A DNA stretch of 64,000 bases from Tetramitus jugosus (GCA_937625935.1 OW569375.1:124001-188000); one strand, 5' to 3'; shown: positions 1,142 through 7,904, counted from the first letter of the stretch. The notes: generated by a model not told the origin, from the sequence alone. Numbers and translations: made by a program.

Positions 1142-1724
1142 ATGAAGAGAACACTTGAAGACAGGTAAGTGACTAGCTGTTTGTTTCGAAAGATGGATGA
1201 TTGATTTTTTGTGTCTTGTTCGTTCAATGTGTGTGACTTTGTATGCTCATCATTGCTTGTTTTTAACTGTCGATCAACAACAACAACAACAAAAACTTGA
1301 TACAAAAAATTATCATCGTCATCATGATTTGTCAAAACAACGTCGAATTGGGAAACATGATCACAGAAACACCACCACGACCACCACGACTACAATATCA
1401 AATAGTAACAATAACAACAATAACAACAACAACAATAGTAGCAGTGAAAGAAGAAAGAGAAGAAGAACAGCTGTTGCACCATCATCATCCACAGCATCAT
1501 CATCATCATCTCATTTGCACATTAGTGAACTGTTACCATCACCTTCATTGTATGATGCAATTCAGACGTTGCGTGATGATGATTTGCCATCCAAAAATCA
1601 ATTGCTTCATTATATTGAACAAGTAGAGAATGCAATTTCAAATCTGAGTGCAAGAGTCGAAGAATACAATTTTAATCATCAAAACAACAACCACAGTGAT
1701 CATCATCATCATCATGTGATCAAC

Positions 1725-1759
<35 letters not shown>

Positions 1760-4478
1760 TAATAGGAAGGATGAATTCAACAATAGTAATGACGATCAAC
1801 TGATACGCAACAAGAACAAAATTCAACAAATTTACTTTGAAAATCGGAAAAAGTGTCAAGAGGCATACAGTCAGTTTGATTCACTGCTGCCAGACAGTAT
1901 GCTACACTCATCTGCATCACCTGCTTCTTCTTCTTATTCTTTGTACAGTAGTGATGCAACATTGTTGGAGCCATTGAAACATGTGGGCAATTACAGTGAG
2001 ATACCCATTGTCAAAAATTGCATTCAACAGTTTGATGCCATCTCTAGCGAATTGGAGCGGAATATTCTTACAGAGTGGCGGATGACACATCGGAGAAATG
2101 TACAATTAGGAAGAGAGCACCGAGAGCGGATGCAAAAGTGGAAGGATGACCACGAAAAGACAAAAAAGAGAAGAAAACGAGGAGCACAGTCAAAGGAAGA
2201 TGAAGAACGAGAAGAGTTGGAGCAATACACTTCTCTGACTGCAGTGTGTCCACCAATGCTCACTCCAAGAGAGAAGGAATTGGAGGTATTAACAAGGAAT
2301 GGATACGTTTCACCTGATACGCTGCGTAGACAGTTGGACGAACAGAGAAAGTATGAGTGTGCGTGGACAGATGAGGAACGGAAGATTTTCATGGACAAGT
2401 TTGCAGAGTTTCCCAAGAATTGCAAGAAGATTGCCACGTTCTTACCGAACAAGACCACCTATGACTGTGTCAACTATTATTATAACCATAAGCTGACACC
2501 GGATTTCATTGAATTGAAAAAGCGATTGAAGAAGAAGAGAAAGTACATGAAGAGAGTGTACGATGAGGGTCCAGGAACGAGAAATAGAGCCAATCATAGA
2601 CCACCAGAGTCGCCTGTGGTGGATGATGTGGAAACTGGCCGTCCTAGACGATCTGCTGCCACCCAGAGTAAGACGAAAGAAGAGTGGTCCGAAGTGGAGG
2701 CCAAGAAATATATTACATTGCTCAAGGAGCACGGCACCAAATTCTCTCTCATTGCCCTCGCGATGAAAACCAAGAATGCGATACAGTGTCAAAAATATTT
2801 TACAAACAACAAATCCGATCTGAGTGTTTATCTGCCCAAGCCCAAGACTGCAGAAAAACCTGCCACAACATCAAACAAGAGCAATCAACAAGCTGCACAA
2901 CAACCACAGCGCATTACTGAGGTGACAACTTCTCCATCAACTGTAGAAGTAGAATCCACTTTACTTGCACCACCTGTATCCTCCAAGGAGAGTGATGAAG
3001 ATCGAGCTCTAACAAAGACGAAGAAACAGGTGTCTATTTGGACGAATTATGAGCGAGATACCTTTTTGCAATTGTTACTCGATTTTGGTAAGGATTGGAA
3101 GAAAATTGCAGAGCAATTGCCTTCAAAGAACGAAAATCAAATCAAAAACTTTTATCAAAACTACAAGGTGAAGCTTGGAATCGCAGCACCTCCTGGCATA
3201 CGGAAGCCCAAGCGAAAAAAGAGATATATATTGATTGAACCTCCTGCAAGCTTATGTAAGCTCGCTGACATTGCACAACAAGTGAACAATATCGGAATGG
3301 ATAGTGTATATAACTTACAGTCATTGTTGTGTGATGAGCCTGCTGTTTCTTTCGAAATGCGCCATGCGAGTGCGACACCACCTCCACCTCCATCACTCTC
3401 CACCATCACTCCTGTACAAACAAAGAACACGACCGAGGATGACTCCAATTTTGTTAATTTATTGGCATTTGTTTCCGATCAAAATGTGCCAGTTACAAAT
3501 CAACAGGCTCAACCACAGCAACAAATCACACCAGATACCAACACCACCAAGAAGAAGGCCACTAATAATAACATCAAGAAGAAATCTGGACCTGGGAGTG
3601 GCCGAGGCAGGAAGCCACTGGATTATCCCAAGCCTGTTGTTAGTCAGCCACACCAGCAAACAAATAATTTCTTCCTCAATAATCAAGCCATATATGGAAT
3701 GCCTACCAGCAATGGAAACACTGGTACAATTAACAATGAGAACACAATAGCAAGTGTGAACGAAGCTGGGAAAGCAACGAGGAAAAAGACGAAGAAGAAC
3801 ACTCCTCCAAAAACTGTACCTCAGGCTGCACAATCTTGGCTCTTTCCACTCATATCCCCACGATCTGAAGTTGCTGAAGTAGGACCATTCCTCCTTCCCG
3901 CTACTCCTCCACCCGACCTTGTATCGAACGAGCACTTGACACACAACGCTCTATCACGATATTTACCAAATCCAATTGTGAATGCCATAAGTTCTTCCCC
4001 ACCGAATAACCTACCACCAATCCATGCCTTCTCCAGTGTTCTCTCTCAACTAAAACTCTCTGATGTGACCCACGGCAATCCTCCATCATCAAGTAACAAC
4101 TCAGCTACCTTCGAGAAAGACAAAGGAGAAAGGAGAAATTTGATTGATCAGTTGATACGTAATCGAGGAAATGACCGGTCAAATGTTCATGCCGGGACAC
4201 AACCAACAAGTGTGCATGAACTTGATGGAGGAAAGGTACCTGATTATGTATCCTATTATCCTCTGCCACCCCAGAACATATTTTCATCTGTTGTGAACAA
4301 TCAGCCGGCAATCTCACAACAACCCGGAACTTACTTCGGTACTCCATTGCCCTCCACAGCATCCAGCTCCGAACCACAACAGGGTTCTCAACCATTGCAC
4401 ACTTACTCTGCCTTCCATCCTGTCCTCCCATTACCTGTGGGTGATAATGCCACAAAAGCAAATGTAAGCACTAAATAA
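1142..4478 (+). CDS. N-CoR/SMRT/Snt1-like SANT-domain corepressor (intron 1165-1366)
   Basis: ATG 1142, GTAAGT donor 1165 and CAG acceptor 1366 join in frame to the long ORF. Motifs: IYFENRKK (N-CoR GPS2-binding-like region), AVCPPML..NG..WTDEERKIFMDKF..KIATFLPNKTTYDCVNYYY (DAD/SANT1), and two further SANT repeats (WSEVE.., WTNYE..). Confidence 0.85.
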
Positions 4479-4496
4479 ATAATTTATTTCCCATGA

Positions 4497-7400
4497 TCAA
4501 TAATTTAACATCGCACGAAAAATATCTTGTTCTTCGATGATTGAACCAGAATCTAGAGTTTCCACATGTGTGTCACTCTCAGCAATCTTTTCTGCTTCAT
4601 TGGTAGGTAAGAATTCTTGTTTGTCACCTGCCATTTCCTGTTGGTTCACGTCCTCATCGGTAAGAGGTGTATCAGGTATCGATTCTGTCATGGTTGATGT
4701 TTGTATTTCTGTTTCAGTCTCTCCTCCTGTTGGAATACTATCTGGTGCACTACAAGTATTTGTATTTGATATAGGTGCTGGGGTTGTACTGGGGGCTGGA
4801 TCCTCGAAAAAGTTAATGTCATTTGGTCCAGTGTCCCAAGTCCATTCGTTGTGTACAATTTCTTTTCTTGGGACAAGATCAGAGCTTGGCTTTCTCCATC
4901 GTGTCTCAGTAGCTGAATTCATGTTATCTTGATTGCTGCCACTAGCAAAGAATTCCATCTGATTATCGCTATTGGCTCCCCAATCTGATTCAATTTGGGT
5001 TTCTCTCCATTCATCTCGTATTTCTGGTGCTAGCTCATTCTGCTTCTCCATATGCTTATCCTCGGTCGTACTGAGAATTACCATGTTTGGAGCAGCTACC
5101 AAGGATATATGTTTAAGAATTTCTTGCATTTGTTTCTTCAAACTATCAATCTCAAGTGATTTCTTATCGTTTTCCTGTAGGAGCTGTTTGATTGCATCAT
5201 TCGCTTGACCTGAGTAACGAGTCTCGGATCGCTCATATCTATCTTGACTGCTTCTGCGATGATAACTACGGTGTGAATCCTCTCGCGCATGTGGACGCCA
5301 ATGATCATTATCCCTCTCTCGACTATCTCTATCCTTTCTGCGATGTTGATAGTCATCACGCACTTCATCTCGAGACTTATTTCCACGGGACGAACAATTG
5401 TCACGATCTTTGGGTCGCTCCTTCTTATTGAATCTCGCCTTTTTGTTTTCCTTTTCCCTCTTATCGCGAGAACTTTCTGGAATGTTGTGGGCCGTCAAGT
5501 ATCTATCAAGCGCTGAAAGTTCCTGTTGTGGAGGGACAGAAGAGCTTGGAACATCGTTGGTGTTTTCAGCGACAGAACTTTCTTCCCCCCTATGCTCAAC
5601 CATCGTTTCCTCCCGGAGACGAGTTACCGTTGTTCTAGATATGAAAGGAGTTTGGACATTTGTTGCATCTTGAAAGAATTCAACTCCATCAGAAGTCCCA
5701 CCCCAGCTATTTTGCCACTCAGACTCTGAAGTTGTGGGCTGTTCTGAGACCCTTGTCTCCTTATTCTGTCTATCAGTGGATAATTCGCTTCCCCAACCTC
5801 CAGATACATTCTTGTCTGATCTCCACGAAGATGAAACGCTCATGTTTTGCTCGCTCGCTGTTGAAGTATCCATTTCAGACCCCCATCTTCCTTCGGAAGC
5901 AGCTGCCGTGTAGGACGAGCGAGTTATAGTACTGGTTGAGATCGAATTTGCTTCAAAAAAGTCCATAGTTTGATTACTTGAGCCCCATGAGTCCCAAGAG
6001 TTGGCATCATTGTTCGTTGTCTTGTGTGACCGGTCAGAGGCTTTATCAGATCGACCACTGTCAGAAGTTGAGCCCCAACCACTAACCCTTTGTTCACTAA
6101 CTGAACGACTGTTGTTGACCTCTTGTGGTGTATCATTGTTGGTATTCAAATCACTTCCCCAAGAGCCCATGTCATTTGTACTGTGACTAGTTACAGTATC
6201 AGAATTAAAGAACTGCATTGCGCTATCTCCCCCTCCCCACTCATTACCTGCGTCATTTGTGGTGTGACTGACAGATTTTGATGCTGGTGATGTGTCGTCG
6301 GTGTTTCGCGAGCCCCACTCCACTCTCTTCCTAGTAGAGCTTGATGGTGTACTGCTCGATTTTAAGGCAGATTTTAGTGGAGTTGCATGGTTTGATGAAA
6401 TACCTCGGAAAGATTCACTATGGGAATTATCGGTTTGTTCGGTAAAGAATGATACTGCATTGTCGCCACCACCAAATTCATCAAACTCGGAGCCAAAGTT
6501 ATTATCATTGGATCGAATACTACTCCTTCTATCAGTTGAGGTGCTATTGGATGCTGATATAGGAGAATTGTTGTCTGATGACCTCTTTGGAATTCTAGGA
6601 AGTTTAGAAATTTTAGGAAGATCAGAGGGAATGGCTGATTCTGGCAACAGCTGCTTTGTCATATCAGAATTGTTGATGAACACTGTTTCACGAACATCCT
6701 TCCTCCTGAAACCAAACTCTGTTGGATTATCACGAATTCTCTTAGCAGGTTGAACTATTGGATCCAACGAGCTCACTTTTACTGTCCTTGTGGGTCCTAC
6801 GACCATTGCAGCAGGCATTCGTTTTTTGCCAAATTTAGCAGCAGCAGCAAAGGATACATCAGCAATGGATATTCCTGGAATCTCTACAGGCTTTTGCAAT
6901 GCAGCCTCCATTTCAACCTGAGCTAGTGCTGCATTGAAATCAAAATCTTCGTCTTCGCCAAAATATAGATAGACAGACTCTAAACTGTTGAATCTTGCTT
7001 CTTTGCCCTTATGTTTCTTACTCTTGGCAGTAGTCTTTCTCATTCTCTTTCTCGGCTTTCTCGCTGCTGCTGCTGTATCCTCATCACTGTTCTGCGCTCT
7101 CTCTTCTGGCATGAAATCGGAATCTTGATCATCATCCTTCTCTTCCTCACTGTGATGCTGCACAATGTCTTGATCATTGGAATCCAACAGTGATGACATT
7201 GTCGGAATGGAAGAAACAGGCGGGATGTTAGACAATTGATCCATTTGTGCGAACCCATCCTCTTGATCATCAATAAACGAGTCACCATCACCTCCCAAAT
7301 CATAATCTCGAGGAATAATGTTTGATGGCGTCATCATAGCAGAACTCTCATGTTGCTTCTTGCGCTTTCTTCTCACTGATCCAGATTCAGACCAAGAGAC

Positions 7401-7904
7401 CCGAGCAGGCACTGCAGTCATTCTTGGAAAATTCTTTTTTTTCGATTTTTCCGACTCTGCATCATCACTCGCTCTCGTTCGCTTTCGTGAGTTGGATGAT
7501 GTTGTTGATGATGATGATAAATGACCATTGCTATTGTTGTTGTTGTTGTTGTTGTTGGAGGATCTCCTTCTTTTCGAAGATTGAGGTTCACTGGTCATTA
7601 AATGATCGTCATCGTCATCATCAAGCACCGTTGTCACCACATTGATATCATCATCGTCATCATCGTCATCAACAATCAACGAATAGGCTGAACCACCACA
7701 GCCATTCTGCCCTCCTGATTGTTGAGAACGTGCATTGAATTGGGCAATCAATTCTACATCAATTACATTGGACTCGGGCTCCCACGTGTCATCTGCTTCG
7801 CCATACCCCTTCCATCGAATACGGTAATACGCAACACCATCAATCACCTTTTTCTCTAATAATTGCTCCACGACAAAAATGTCATCTTCTTCTACACTTG
7901 TCAT
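4497..7904 (-). CDS. Chromodomain protein with long disordered WG/GW-repeat tail
   Basis: N-terminal FVVEQLLEKK..YRIRWKGYGEADDTWEPESNV chromodomain; nine WG dipeptides in a Ser/Thr/Asp-rich tail; late coiled coil. Confidence 0.9.
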   Translation of the reverse strand: MTSVEEDDIFVVEQLLEKKVIDGVAYYRIRWKGYGEADDTWEPESNVIDVELIAQFNARSQQSGGQNGCGGSAYSLIVDDDDDDDDINVVTTVLDDDDDDHLMTSEPQSSKRRRSSNNNNNNNNSNGHLSSSSTTSSNSRKRTRASDDAESEKSKKKNFPRMTAVPARVSWSESGSVRRKRKKQHESSAMMTPSNIIPRDYDLGGDGDSFIDDQEDGFAQMDQLSNIPPVSSIPTMSSLLDSNDQDIVQHHSEEEKDDDQDSDFMPEERAQNSDEDTAAAARKPRKRMRKTTAKSKKHKGKEARFNSLESVYLYFGEDEDFDFNAALAQVEMEAALQKPVEIPGISIADVSFAAAAKFGKKRMPAAMVVGPTRTVKVSSLDPIVQPAKRIRDNPTEFGFRRKDVRETVFINNSDMTKQLLPESAIPSDLPKISKLPRIPKRSSDNNSPISASNSTSTDRRSSIRSNDNNFGSEFDEFGGGDNAVSFFTEQTDNSHSESFRGISSNHATPLKSALKSSSTPSSSTRKRVEWGSRNTDDTSPASKSVSHTTNDAGNEWGGGDSAMQFFNSDTVTSHSTNDMGSWGSDLNTNNDTPQEVNNSRSVSEQRVSGWGSTSDSGRSDKASDRSHKTTNNDANSWDSWGSSNQTMDFFEANSISTSTITRSSYTAAASEGRWGSEMDTSTASEQNMSVSSSWRSDKNVSGGWGSELSTDRQNKETRVSEQPTTSESEWQNSWGGTSDGVEFFQDATNVQTPFISRTTVTRLREETMVEHRGEESSVAENTNDVPSSSVPPQQELSALDRYLTAHNIPESSRDKREKENKKARFNKKERPKDRDNCSSRGNKSRDEVRDDYQHRRKDRDSRERDNDHWRPHAREDSHRSYHRRSSQDRYERSETRYSGQANDAIKQLLQENDKKSLEIDSLKKQMQEILKHISLVAAPNMVILSTTEDKHMEKQNELAPEIRDEWRETQIESDWGANSDNQMEFFASGSNQDNMNSATETRWRKPSSDLVPRKEIVHNEWTWDTGPNDINFFEDPAPSTTPAPISNTNTCSAPDSIPTGGETETEIQTSTMTESIPDTPLTDEDVNQQEMAGDKQEFLPTNEAEKIAESDTHVETLDSGSIIEEQDIFRAMLNY

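What the first reader, a model, noticed from the sequence alone, without database searches (positions are those of the whole stretch)
4497..7904. Chromodomain fused to a WG/GW-rich tail: candidate single-chain RITS-like adaptor
Seen: N-terminal chromodomain with the three aromatic cage positions intact (F of FVVE; W and Y of WKGY). The disordered tail has nine WG motifs (VEWGS, NEWGG, GSWGS, SGWGS, DSWGS, GRWGS, GGWGS, NSWGG, SDWGA) in Ser/Thr/Gly/Asp context, plus a coiled coil. Established: WG/GW repeats in such context bind Argonaute (GW182, S. pombe Tas3, plant NRPE1/SPT5L, Tetrahymena Wag1), and in RITS the chromodomain (Chp1) and the Ago hook (Tas3) are separate proteins. Inference: one polypeptide could link methyl-H3 to small-RNA-loaded Argonaute/Piwi, implying an RNA-guided heterochromatin pathway in this lineage.
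Basis: partly seen in the sequence, partly recalled or inferred. Interest (0 to 1): 0.82.

Follow-up and report, generated by a model that had tools for sequence, protein, structure and literature searches.

The report
Chromodomain protein with tryptophan-glycine repeat tail
A soil amoeba related to Naegleria encodes a one-off nuclear protein that joins an HP1-type reader of methylated histone H3 to a repeated tryptophan-glycine array of the kind that docks Argonaute proteins, so it may link small-RNA silencing to silent chromatin, but that binding is not shown.

Summary
Window 4497-7904(-) is an intact, intron-free, transcribed ORF of 1135 aa. It has a Pfam chromodomain with an intact aromatic cage and all nine WG dipeptides (about 0.8 expected by chance).

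New here:
- The WGs lie in 3.5 tandem units of about 90 aa, in which almost only W-G and F-F are retained.
- Six copies of a longer motif, W-G-x5/6-[MVI]-x-FF, are private to this gene.
- The tail has no detectable relative among 1.84 billion representatives.
- The host is a heterolobosean amoeba.

The genome has two Argonautes, three RdRPs, several Dicer-like genes, three Pre-SET/SET methyltransferases and canonical H3 tails. Its Spt6 also carries a WG array, as in plants.

The Argonaute-hook reading is only partly supported:
- A re-implemented plant Ago-hook score is positive, but weak to medium.
- Both Argonautes are PIWI-clade.
- Key human AGO2 Trp-pocket residues are replaced (K660 to F/Y, R688 to L).
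- The complex prediction gave no answer.

Plant NERD already combines a histone reader with a GW hook. The best reading, at about 0.4, is a RITS-like adaptor between methylated H3 and Argonaute.

Another first-stage note (s1-548100) covers the same stretch.

The parts
4497..7904 (-). Complete single-exon gene, 1135 aa plus stop
   Evidence: ORF list. RNA-library contigs lie colinear without joints, and strain indels preserve the frame. Single copy in the 26.35-Mb genome.
7728..7877 (-). HP1-type chromodomain, aa 10-59, with aromatic cage F10/W31/Y34
   Evidence: Pfam PF00385 at E 6.7e-12. Alignments to CBX5, CBX1, dHP1 and CBX3.
7035..7574 (-). Acidic and basic disordered linker with Asp runs, poly-Asn and four basic clusters (KRRR 111-114, RKRTR 140-144, RRKRKK 178-183, RKPRKRMRK 282-290) that look like nuclear localisation signals
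   Evidence: Direct reading of the translation. The NLS function is inferred.
5505..6509 (-). Tandem array of 3.5 diverged units of about 84-94 aa (aa 466-800). Each unit has a W-G-x5-[MVI]-x-FF site and up to two [GS]-W-G-S sites.
   Evidence: Adjacent units give alignment z-scores of 6.1-8.5 against shuffles. Unit identity is 17-36%, and the columns kept in at least 3 of 4 units are almost only WGG, FF and WGS.
5673..6359 (-). WG-rich core, aa 516-744: eight WG motifs. W-to-W spacing is 26, 26, 28, 27, 34, 20, 10 and 26 aa, plus two close W-x2-3-W pairs (3 and 4 aa apart).
   Evidence: Composition S 22%, T 11%, G 8.4%, N 8.4%, D 8%, W 4.9%, with L, I, Y and C each under 1%. Dos-score fragments 516-562, 580-644, 667-676, 691-706 and 730-740.
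5205..5504 (-). Arg/Asp/Glu/Lys-rich mixed-charge segment, aa 801-900 (R 22%, net charge +10)
   Evidence: Composition. AF2 helix at 845-865.
5097..5243 (-). Predicted long helix or short coiled coil, aa 888-936 (heptad at 905-936); candidate dimerisation element
   Evidence: Heptad pattern by direct reading. AF2 helix at 888-936 with pLDDT 60-65 in an otherwise poor model.
4806..5009 (-). Two further W...FF motifs outside the tandem array (WGANSDNQMEFF at 975-986 and WDTGPNDINFF at 1023-1033), plus W966, W1003 and W1021
   Evidence: The 248 nt spanning both motifs show no difference from a 97%-identical metagenome contig, although the flanks differ.
4500..4805 (-). Acidic, Thr/Pro-rich C-terminal tail, aa 1034-1135, evolving almost neutrally between strains
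   Evidence: most strain differences here are non-synonymous.

Best explanation
The gene encodes a lineage-specific nuclear scaffold.

Shown:
- An HP1-type chromodomain with an intact methyl-lysine cage and no chromoshadow domain.
- A long acidic disordered tail with several basic clusters.
- A tandemly duplicated array in which exposed Trp (W-G) and Phe-Phe residues are nearly the only conserved positions.
- A probable helix or coiled coil.
- Transcription in environmental samples, and an open frame preserved across strains.

Inferred:
- The chromodomain docks on H3K9me2/3 (possibly K27me3) laid down by one of the three Pre-SET/SET enzymes.
- The helix dimerises the protein.
- The multivalent Trp array recruits a Trp-binding partner to methylated chromatin.
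- The most likely partner is one or both of the genome's PIWI-clade Argonautes, loaded with RdRP/Dicer-derived small RNAs.

On this reading the protein does in one chain what Chp1 plus Tas3 do in fission-yeast RITS. It holds Argonaute on already methylated chromatin so that nascent-transcript targeting and H3K9 methylation reinforce each other. The longer W-G-x5-[MVI]-x-FF sites would be bipartite, higher-affinity versions of the simple W-G-S sites.
For: - Chromodomain and cage.
- WG excess: 9 observed against 0.8 expected, with 0 of 200,000 shuffles reaching 9.
- W-G and F-F are what survives in units that are only 17-36% identical. This is the pattern described for NRPE1-type hooks (PMC2910046).
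- Composition and low L/I/Y/C content fit the published hook signature (PMC2910046).
- Trp spacing is at least 10 aa apart from two close W-x2-3-W pairs, as required for TNRC6 sites (PMC9262622).
- The re-implemented dos score gives six fragments above the 6.99 threshold, the best at 36.5, summing to about 111 half-bits. Other ORFs in the window score 7.5 or less.
- The machinery is present: two Argonautes, three RdRPs, several double-RNase III genes, three Pre-SET+SET genes and canonical H3 tails.
- A second WG array sits in Spt6 of the same genome, as in plant SPT6L and Physarum Spt6 (PMC2910046, PMC9864664).
- Strict genome-wide DNA-pattern scans for three WG codons 9-18 aa apart, and for three W-G-S 9-18 or 23-33 aa apart, found only these two genes outside telomere-like G-rich repeats, apart from a few isolated near-chance hits. 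23 of the 123 matches of the first scan were not displayed.
- PIWI-type Argonautes can bind GW proteins (Twi1p with Wag1p/CnjBp: PMC5666084, PMC2910046) and aromatic motifs in disordered GTSF1 (PMC13650160).
Against: - Both Argonautes are PIWI-clade.
- Of the hAGO2 pocket residues, K660 is F or Y, R688 is L, Y698 aligns to a gap and P700 is C or T. Only F653, L694 and P590 are kept.
- Published analysis finds these pockets variable outside the AGO clade (PMC12477606).
- Phe and Met are disfavoured in known hooks, and the FF motif breaks the predicted hook into fragments.
- Scores are weak to medium (8-36) against about 90-107 for TNRC6 and over 150 for NRPE1 (PMC2910046).
- No orthologue exists outside near-identical strains, so deep conservation cannot be tested.
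- Strain polymorphism is too sparse to show constraint on W, G or FF.
- No experimental or structural evidence of binding.
Confidence: 0.4

Rival explanations
1. Same chromatin reader, different Trp-binding partner. The W array recruits another effector with Trp pockets or aromatic-binding grooves, such as CCR4-NOT (CNOT9/CAF40, NOT1) or an unknown lineage-specific protein. That would bring RNA decay or another activity to methylated chromatin without touching Argonaute.
For: - Trp in a Ser/Gly/Asp context is also the recognition element for the CNOT9 pockets used by the GW182 silencing domains (PMC5303829 and PMC12819147 were listed but not read in detail).
- The AGO-type pockets are not conserved in this genome's Argonautes.
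- The private W-G-x5-[MVI]-x-FF motif looks like a specific bipartite linear motif, not a generic hook.
Against: - No partner was identified.
- CNOT9 presence in this genome was not tested.
- The parallel WG array in Spt6 matches the plant Argonaute-hook precedent more closely than a CCR4-NOT one.
Confidence: 0.2
2. No dedicated partner. The evenly spaced aromatic residues (W, FF) in a polar Ser/Thr/Asn/Gly spacer act as stickers. Together with the coiled coil and the mixed-charge segment, they drive self-association or condensation of methylated chromatin. This would be an HP1 substitute in a genome where no chromoshadow domain was detected.
For: - Aromatic residues recur every 9-30 aa through aa 470-754 in a low-complexity polar context.
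- A probable helix or coiled coil lies at 888-936.
- The own-genome search for Chromo_shadow found nothing.
Against: - The array is acidic (net -25 over aa 466-800), which disfavours homotypic condensation.
- A sticker model does not explain why Gly follows Trp in 9 of 20 cases, nor why the precise W-G-x5-[MVI]-x-FF register is kept.
- The chromoshadow search had no positive control.
Confidence: 0.15
3. The acidic aromatic motifs are histone-binding or other chaperone-like or trafficking-type linear motifs. The FF parts could be FFAT-like or cap-anchor-like motifs that bind VAP at the nuclear envelope or H2A-H2B. The protein would then tether or handle nucleosomes and would not recruit RNAi.
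For: - The FF sites sit in an acidic context. One copy (DFFEANS) resembles the FFAT core EFFDAxE; this rests on recalled knowledge of that motif.
- The whole protein is very acidic (net -61).
- Other first-stage notes report F/WG acidic motifs in trafficking-type proteins of this genome (s1-551553, s1-541913); these were not checked.
Against: - Five of the six copies lack a small residue at FFAT position 5 or an acidic residue at position 4 (listing).
- FFAT does not explain the Trp conserved nine residues upstream, nor the five FF-less W-G-S sites.
Confidence: 0.1
4. The repeat array is a recent, largely neutral low-complexity expansion. Only the chromodomain is functional, and the WG excess is a by-product of duplicating one unit.
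For: - The tail has no homologue anywhere.
- Listed strain differences are 27 non-synonymous against 13 synonymous, and the C-terminal comparison with L006 gives roughly equal rates.
- One metagenome contig carries a TAG at codon 953.
Against: - The units have diverged to 17-36% identity yet keep W-G and F-F.
- Two more W...FF copies lie outside the tandem array.
- All strain indels keep the frame.
- The 248 nt around the last two motifs are invariant although the flanks differ.
Confidence: 0.1

Closest known systems
S. pombe RITS (Chp1 chromodomain subunit + Tas3 GW subunit + Ago1)
   Same: An H3K9me-reading chromodomain is combined with a WG/GW Argonaute hook, in a genome that also has RdRP, Dicer and SUV39-type enzymes.
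   Different: - Here both elements are on one chain.
- There is no similarity to the Chp1 C-terminal domains or to Tas3 beyond the dipeptides.
- The available Argonautes are PIWI-clade, not AGO-clade.
- Binding is untested.
Arabidopsis NERD (GW repeats + PHD finger; binds histone H3 and AGO2; PMC7544125)
   Same: A single polypeptide joins a histone-tail reader to a GW Argonaute hook in a chromatin-silencing pathway.
   Different:
- There is no sequence relationship.
- It is plant-specific.
Plant NRPE1, SPT5L and SPT6L/GTB1 Ago-hook platforms (PMC2910046, PMC11127964)
   Same: These are repeat arrays in which only WG/GW and a Gly/Ser/Asn/Asp-rich, Leu/Ile/Tyr/Cys-poor composition are conserved. 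This genome's Spt6 also carries a WG array.
   Different: - There are far fewer motifs here (9 against 12-45).
- Spacers are longer (20-34 aa).
- An embedded Met/Val-x-Phe-Phe element is atypical for hooks.
- Dos scores are lower.
HP1 / CBX1, 3, 5 and MPP8 chromodomains
   Same: They are the best sequence matches to aa 3-64, with an identical cage architecture.
   Different: No chromoshadow domain (HP1) and no ankyrin repeats (MPP8); Pfam finds only the chromodomain.
Tetrahymena Wag1p/CnjBp with Twi1p, and animal GTSF1 with PIWI
   Same: Both are precedents for disordered Trp or aromatic motifs binding PIWI-type Argonautes in nuclear small-RNA pathways (PMC5666084, PMC13650160).
   Different: Neither has a chromodomain, and neither shows sequence similarity. 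Their binding sites on PIWI are not defined well enough to be checked here.
GW182/TNRC6
   Same: Multiple Trp residues at least 10 aa apart in a Ser/Gly-rich disordered region.
   Different: No UBA, RRM, PAM2 or silencing domain. GW182 is cytoplasmic and acts in the miRNA pathway, and its partner pockets (K660, R688) are not conserved in this genome's Argonautes.

Membership tests
Chromodomain (Pfam PF00385) | Profile match above the gathering score | tested here: met
   45.6 bits against 25.1, E 6.7e-12, aa 10-59, covering the full profile 1-53.
Chromodomain (methyl-lysine reading subtype) | Three aromatic cage residues at the HP1 Y24/W45/Y48-equivalent positions | tested here: met
   F10, W31 and Y34 align to Y/F, W and F/Y of CBX5, CBX1, dHP1 and CBX3. 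Which methylated lysine it binds cannot be decided from sequence.
HP1 family | C-terminal chromoshadow domain | tested here: not met
   No PF01393 match in the protein at E 0.01 or better, and none in the genome (that search had no positive control).
WG/GW Argonaute-hook platform | Several WG/GW dipeptides in a disordered region, beyond chance | tested here: met
   9 WG and 2 GW. None of 200,000 shuffles reached 9 WG. AF2 finds no order there, although the model is weak.
WG/GW Argonaute-hook platform | Compositional signature: rich in G, S, N, D and W, poor in L, I, M, Y and C; dos score at or above 6.99 half-bits | tested here: met
   My own re-implementation of Table 1 and the extension rule of PMC2910046 gives fragments of 22.6, 36.5, 8.2, 17.5, 15.6 and 10.9 half-bits. 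The ics score was not computed because its table was not available. Phe and Met in the FF motif count against.
WG/GW Argonaute-hook platform | Trp residues at least 10 residues apart, so that they can reach separate pockets | tested here: met
   Spacings of 26, 26, 28, 27, 34, 20, 10 and 26 aa, apart from two close W-x2-3-W pairs at 3 and 4 aa; criterion from PMC9262622.
WG/GW Argonaute-hook platform | Trp-dependent physical binding to an Argonaute | not testable with these tools
   The one complex prediction returned no answer and counts neither way.
WG/GW Argonaute-hook platform | Partner Argonaute with hAGO2-type Trp pockets (K660 and L694; F653; R688) | tested here: not met
   Mapped through a cucumber AGO1 / hAGO2 alignment. 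K660 is F (AgoA) or Y (AgoB, Naegleria, Willaertia) and R688 is L. F653 and L694 are kept. Other binding sites on PIWI-type proteins are not excluded.
RITS subunit Chp1 orthologue | Chp1-type domains after the chromodomain that bind Tas3 | tested here: not met
   No Pfam domain besides Chromo. No full-length relatives.
GW182/TNRC6 family | UBA, RRM, PAM2 and silencing domain | tested here: not met
   None found by Pfam.
FFAT-motif VAP ligands | Core E-F-F-D-A-x-E with an acidic residue at position 4 and a small residue at position 5 | tested here: not met
   Only DFFEANS fits. The other five copies have E, D, S, Q or A at the critical positions (listing). The consensus is from my own knowledge.
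Polycomb CBX | C-terminal Pc box, and PRC1/PRC2 present in the genome | tested here: inconclusive
   The Polycomb chromodomain is a weaker match (8e-11) than HP1 (1e-13). The Su(z)12 VEFS-box was not found, but that search had no positive control. The Pc box was not searched.

The most novel reading that the evidence does not exclude
A natural single-chain RITS in Discoba: one protein reads H3K9me and, through a new bipartite Trp...Phe-Phe motif together with simple W-G-S sites, holds PIWI-clade Argonautes on chromatin. Combined with the WG array in Spt6, this would mean co-transcriptional, small-RNA-guided heterochromatin in Heterolobosea, built on PIWI-type Argonautes that bind Trp motifs at a site other than the human AGO2 pockets.
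Probability: 0.25. Interest if true: 0.75.

Novelty: new variant of a known kind. Interest (0 to 1): 0.55.

Why it matters
Coupling of RNAi to heterochromatin is understood mechanistically in fission yeast, plants, ciliates and animals. Nothing comparable is known for Discoba (Heterolobosea, including the Naegleria group).

A gene that fuses the two halves of the RITS logic works as Rosetta-stone evidence that the two pathways are linked in this lineage. It also gives a compact, testable handle: one reader domain plus a short array of about 11 Trp residues.

If PIWI-clade Argonautes bind this array although they lack the human AGO2-type pockets, that would reveal a second Trp-binding mode. It would also bear on whether the Ago hook is ancestral to eukaryotes.

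If the partner is not Argonaute, the private W-G-x5-[MVI]-x-FF motif is a new linear motif that still needs a receptor.

Tried and rejected
- **Complex prediction:** the AgoA core (770 aa) with tail aa 548-655 returned 'no answer' (ipSAE 0.00 and 0.01). This is neither support nor evidence against.
- **Structure prediction:** single-sequence AlphaFold2 of the whole protein was uninformative (mean pLDDT 35.7). Even the chromodomain was not folded, so no fold search was run.
- **Relatives:**
  - The word-index search found none with the full length or with the chromodomain region.
  - The exhaustive representative search found chromodomain-only hits plus one 153-aa, 94%-identical fragment.
  - None of the 150 best hits has a WG-rich tail.
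  - The ESM Atlas gave no usable hit.
  - The metagenome locus scan found none.
- **Paralogues:** none for the tail. Four other chromodomain genes that I inspected have no WG tails.
- **Transposon cargo:** rejected. The gene is single copy, sits between host genes, and has the same neighbour in a related strain.
- **Polymorphism test on W, G and FF:** underpowered. No hit was seen among 27 listed non-synonymous changes, but only about 1 was expected.
- **PIP-box reading of the FF motif:** rejected. The hydrophobic residue is one position too close and Gln is not in register.
- **FFAT reading:** rejected for five of the six copies.
- **Deciding K9 against K27 specificity from sequence:** not possible. 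The PRC2 marker search was silent but had no control.
Full report
**1. What is there**

Window 4497-7904 on the minus strand is one uninterrupted ORF of 1135 aa. Pfam finds a single domain, Chromo (PF00385), at aa 10-59 (E 6.7e-12, 45.6 bits against a cut-off of 25.1).

Against solved structures, the first 75 residues match HP1-class chromodomains best: CBX5 at 1.1e-13, CBX1 at 6.8e-13, Drosophila HP1 at 2.4e-12 and CBX3 at 3.1e-12. MPP8, Polycomb/CBX2-8, CDY, SUV39H1 and Chp1 follow. In the printed alignments F10, W31 and Y34 occupy the three cage positions, and the TWEPE segment is conserved. There is no chromoshadow domain.

The rest of the protein is acidic and polar (S 14%, D 9.5%, E 8%, net charge -61). 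It contains:
- Asp runs and a poly-Asn tract.
- Four basic clusters that look like nuclear localisation signals.
- An Arg/Asp/Glu-rich segment (aa 801-900).
- A segment with a clean a/d heptad at 905-936, which a poor single-sequence AF2 model also draws as a helix at 888-936.

**2. The WG observation**

With 18 W and 47 G in the 1065-aa tail, about 0.8 WG are expected. None of 200,000 shuffles reached nine, and the binomial P is 2e-8. In four other chromodomain genes of this genome, W is followed by G in 0-1 of 13-23 cases.

**3.

The WGs belong to 3.5 tandem units of 84-94 aa spanning aa 466-800. Adjacent units align with z-scores of 6.1-8.5 over shuffles. The units are only 17-36% identical, and the columns kept in at least three of four units are almost exclusively W-G-G, F-F and W-G-S.

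Each unit has two kinds of site:
- A longer site, W-G-x5-[MVI]-x-F-F. There are six copies in all, counting one with F in place of W and two more C-terminal copies at 975-986 and 1023-1033.
- Up to two simple [GS]-W-G-S sites.

A DNA-level scan for W-G-x5-[MVI]-x-FF gives 12 genome hits against 7 for the reversed control, and three of the 12 lie in this gene. A triple W-G-S pattern at 23-33 aa spacing hits only this gene outside telomere-like repeats. The tail has no paralogue.

**4. Is it a real, expressed gene?**

Contigs from soil metatranscriptomes lie colinear on the ORF without joints. They include a 2083-nt contig from an oligo-dT library covering 4502-6521. Groundwater and soil DNA runs hold the gene too. 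Because these are contigs, they show presence, not expression level.

Strain differences include eight indels of 3, 6 or 30 nt. In the poly-Asn tract the listed pieces (1+11 in one run; a 10-nt piece inside a 12-gap record in another) come to 12 per record. The frame is therefore always kept.

Listed substitutions are 27 non-synonymous against 13 synonymous, so most of the tail is weakly constrained. None touches a WG tryptophan, its glycine or an FF, but only about one such hit was expected, so this test is underpowered.

A 950-nt metagenome contig (L006) is about 97% identical and keeps the same convergent neighbour. The 248 nt around the last two W...FF motifs are unchanged although both flanks differ. 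L006 also carries a TAG at codon 953.

**5. Whose genome?**

The nearest named relatives of the genome's Argonaute are Naegleria lovaniensis (48% identity) and Willaertia magna (44%). The organism is therefore a heterolobosean amoeba outside those genera. It is widespread in soil and groundwater data.

**6. The pathway context**

The 26.35-Mb genome encodes:
- Two full-length Argonautes with ArgoN-PAZ-Piwi domains.
- Three RdRPs.
- At least four genes with two RNase III domains.
- Three Pre-SET+SET methyltransferases.
- H3 tails with canonical QTARKS and AARKS sites.

Following an earlier scan note, I confirmed that the Spt6 orthologue carries six tandem 11-aa GNWGRDxPSD repeats at aa 297-353 and a C-terminal GWG. 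That is 7 WG among 13 W. WG arrays on Spt6 are known in plants, where SPT6L/GTB1 is an AGO-hook protein, and in Physarum (PMC2910046, PMC11127964, PMC9864664).

My DNA-pattern scans were strict: three WG codons 9-18 aa apart, or three W-G-S 9-18 or 23-33 aa apart. Under those definitions, Spt6 and this gene are the only WG arrays found outside telomere-like G-rich repeats. A few isolated near-chance hits also appeared, and 23 of the 123 matches of the first scan were not displayed.

**7. Does the array look like an Argonaute hook?**

Yes by composition and spacing.
- Region 520-745 is rich in S, T, G, N, D and W, with L, I, Y and C each below 1%. Trp residues are 10-34 aa apart, except for two close W-x2-3-W pairs (637/640 and 730/734).
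- I re-implemented the published plant scoring matrix and its extension rule from PMC2910046 (Table 1, dec 8.6, threshold 6.99 half-bits).
- This gives six significant fragments of 8.2-36.5 half-bits, summing to about 111.
- Other long ORFs in the window score 7.5 or less, whole-protein shuffles have a 95th percentile of 18.5, and the Spt6 array scores 42.
- The paper classes 25-150 as medium. It reports about 90-107 for TNRC6 and over 150 for NRPE1.
- The Met/Val-x-Phe-Phe element is compositionally foreign to hooks and is what fragments the domain.

**8. What argues against Argonaute binding**

Both Argonautes are PIWI-clade: Piwi structures match at E 1e-160, human AGO1 at 1e-64.

I mapped the human AGO2 pocket residues named in the literature: K660 and L694 (pocket 1), F653 (pocket 2) and R688 (pocket 3) from bioRxiv 10.1101/2025.10.18.683247, and C691 and P700 from PMC9262622. 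The mapping used a cucumber AGO1 / hAGO2 alignment and a MAFFT alignment. The result:
- K660 is F in AgoA and Y in AgoB, Naegleria and Willaertia.
- R688 is L.
- Y698 aligns to a gap.
- P700 is C or T.
- F653, L694 and P590 are kept.

This agrees with the published finding that the three pockets are variable in the PIWI clade (PMC12477606).

It is not decisive. The PIWI-type Twi1p binds the GW proteins Wag1p and CnjBp (PMC5666084, PMC2910046). Animal PIWIs bind aromatic residues in the disordered centre of GTSF1 (PMC13650160).

**9. Verdict on mechanism**

Shown: a transcribed, frame-conserved, lineage-restricted gene for an HP1-type methyl-lysine reader without a chromoshadow domain. It is fused to a tandem array whose only conserved residues are exposed Trp-Gly and Phe-Phe, and it has a probable dimerising helix.

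Inferred: nuclear localisation, H3K9me binding, and multivalent recruitment of a Trp-binding partner.

I rate the readings as follows:
- Argonaute as the partner (a one-chain RITS-like adaptor): about 0.4.
- Another Trp-pocket effector: about 0.2.
- Partner-less aromatic sticker scaffold: about 0.15.
- Histone, VAP or other motif readings: about 0.1.
- Neutral expansion: about 0.1.

**10. Novelty**

The tail has no detectable homologue among 1.84 billion representatives. No chromodomain-plus-hook fusion turned up in the literature searches.

The logic is known, however. Fission-yeast RITS splits it over Chp1 and Tas3, and Arabidopsis NERD already unites a histone reader (a PHD finger) with a GW hook on one chain (PMC7544125). 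I therefore class this as a new variant of a known kind. Interest is moderate, and would be high only if binding to PIWI-clade Argonautes is demonstrated.

Noticed in passing
L011:1203-5735 (G000 C20:247702-252234), Spt6 aa 295-354 and 1449-1466: The Spt6 orthologue carries six tandem 11-aa GNWGRDxPSD repeats inserted near aa 297-353, plus a C-terminal SSGWGNK. That is 7 WG among 13 W, with a dos-type score of 42. It parallels plant SPT6L and Physarum Spt6.
   Followed up: partly
L006:1-950 against window 4300-5300(-): A JGI metagenome contig, 97% identical, has TAG in place of the AAG codon for K953. It also has a 3-nt insertion and a changed last codon. The stop variant does not appear among the displayed differences of the four sequencing runs laid on the gene (45 further differences were not shown). 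It is either a truncated allele or an assembly error.
   Followed up: partly
window 5602/5603 (after aa 767): Two environmental RNA-library assemblies carry an in-frame 30-nt insertion. It replaces M by STSSVDPFAAL, a net gain of 10 residues, just after the repeat array.
   Followed up: partly
L007:2111-4972 and L008:2091-4859 (G000 C41 and C52): Both Argonautes of this genome, and their Naegleria and Willaertia relatives, have an aromatic residue (F or Y) where human AGO2 has the pocket-1 lysine K660, and Leu where it has the pocket-3 arginine R688.
   Followed up: partly
whole genome G000: No chromoshadow domain (PF01393) and no Su(z)12 VEFS-box (PF09733) were detected, although at least nine chromodomain genes and three Pre-SET/SET genes exist. 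Neither search had a positive control, so absence of HP1 or PRC2 is only a lead.
   Followed up: no
proteins P0002-P0014: The best chromodomain matches in the 1.84-billion-protein library are unnamed proteins of 300-970 aa. The query chromodomain matches each of them at 4-7 separate stretches, so they are proteins with many tandem chromodomains.
   Followed up: no
window 4479-4496: This gene and the three-SANT/Myb (N-CoR/Snt1-like) gene at 1197-4478(+) end tail-to-tail only 18 bp apart. The arrangement is the same in the related metagenome contig L006.
   Followed up: partly
G000 C14:556193-556455, C24:490526-491083, C36:453197-453580, C21:410-559, C22:6-181: Long degenerate TTTGGG/TTGGG telomere-like repeats run into near-pure poly-G stretches of tens of bases. 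Whether the C14, C24 and C36 sites are contig ends was not checked.
   Followed up: no
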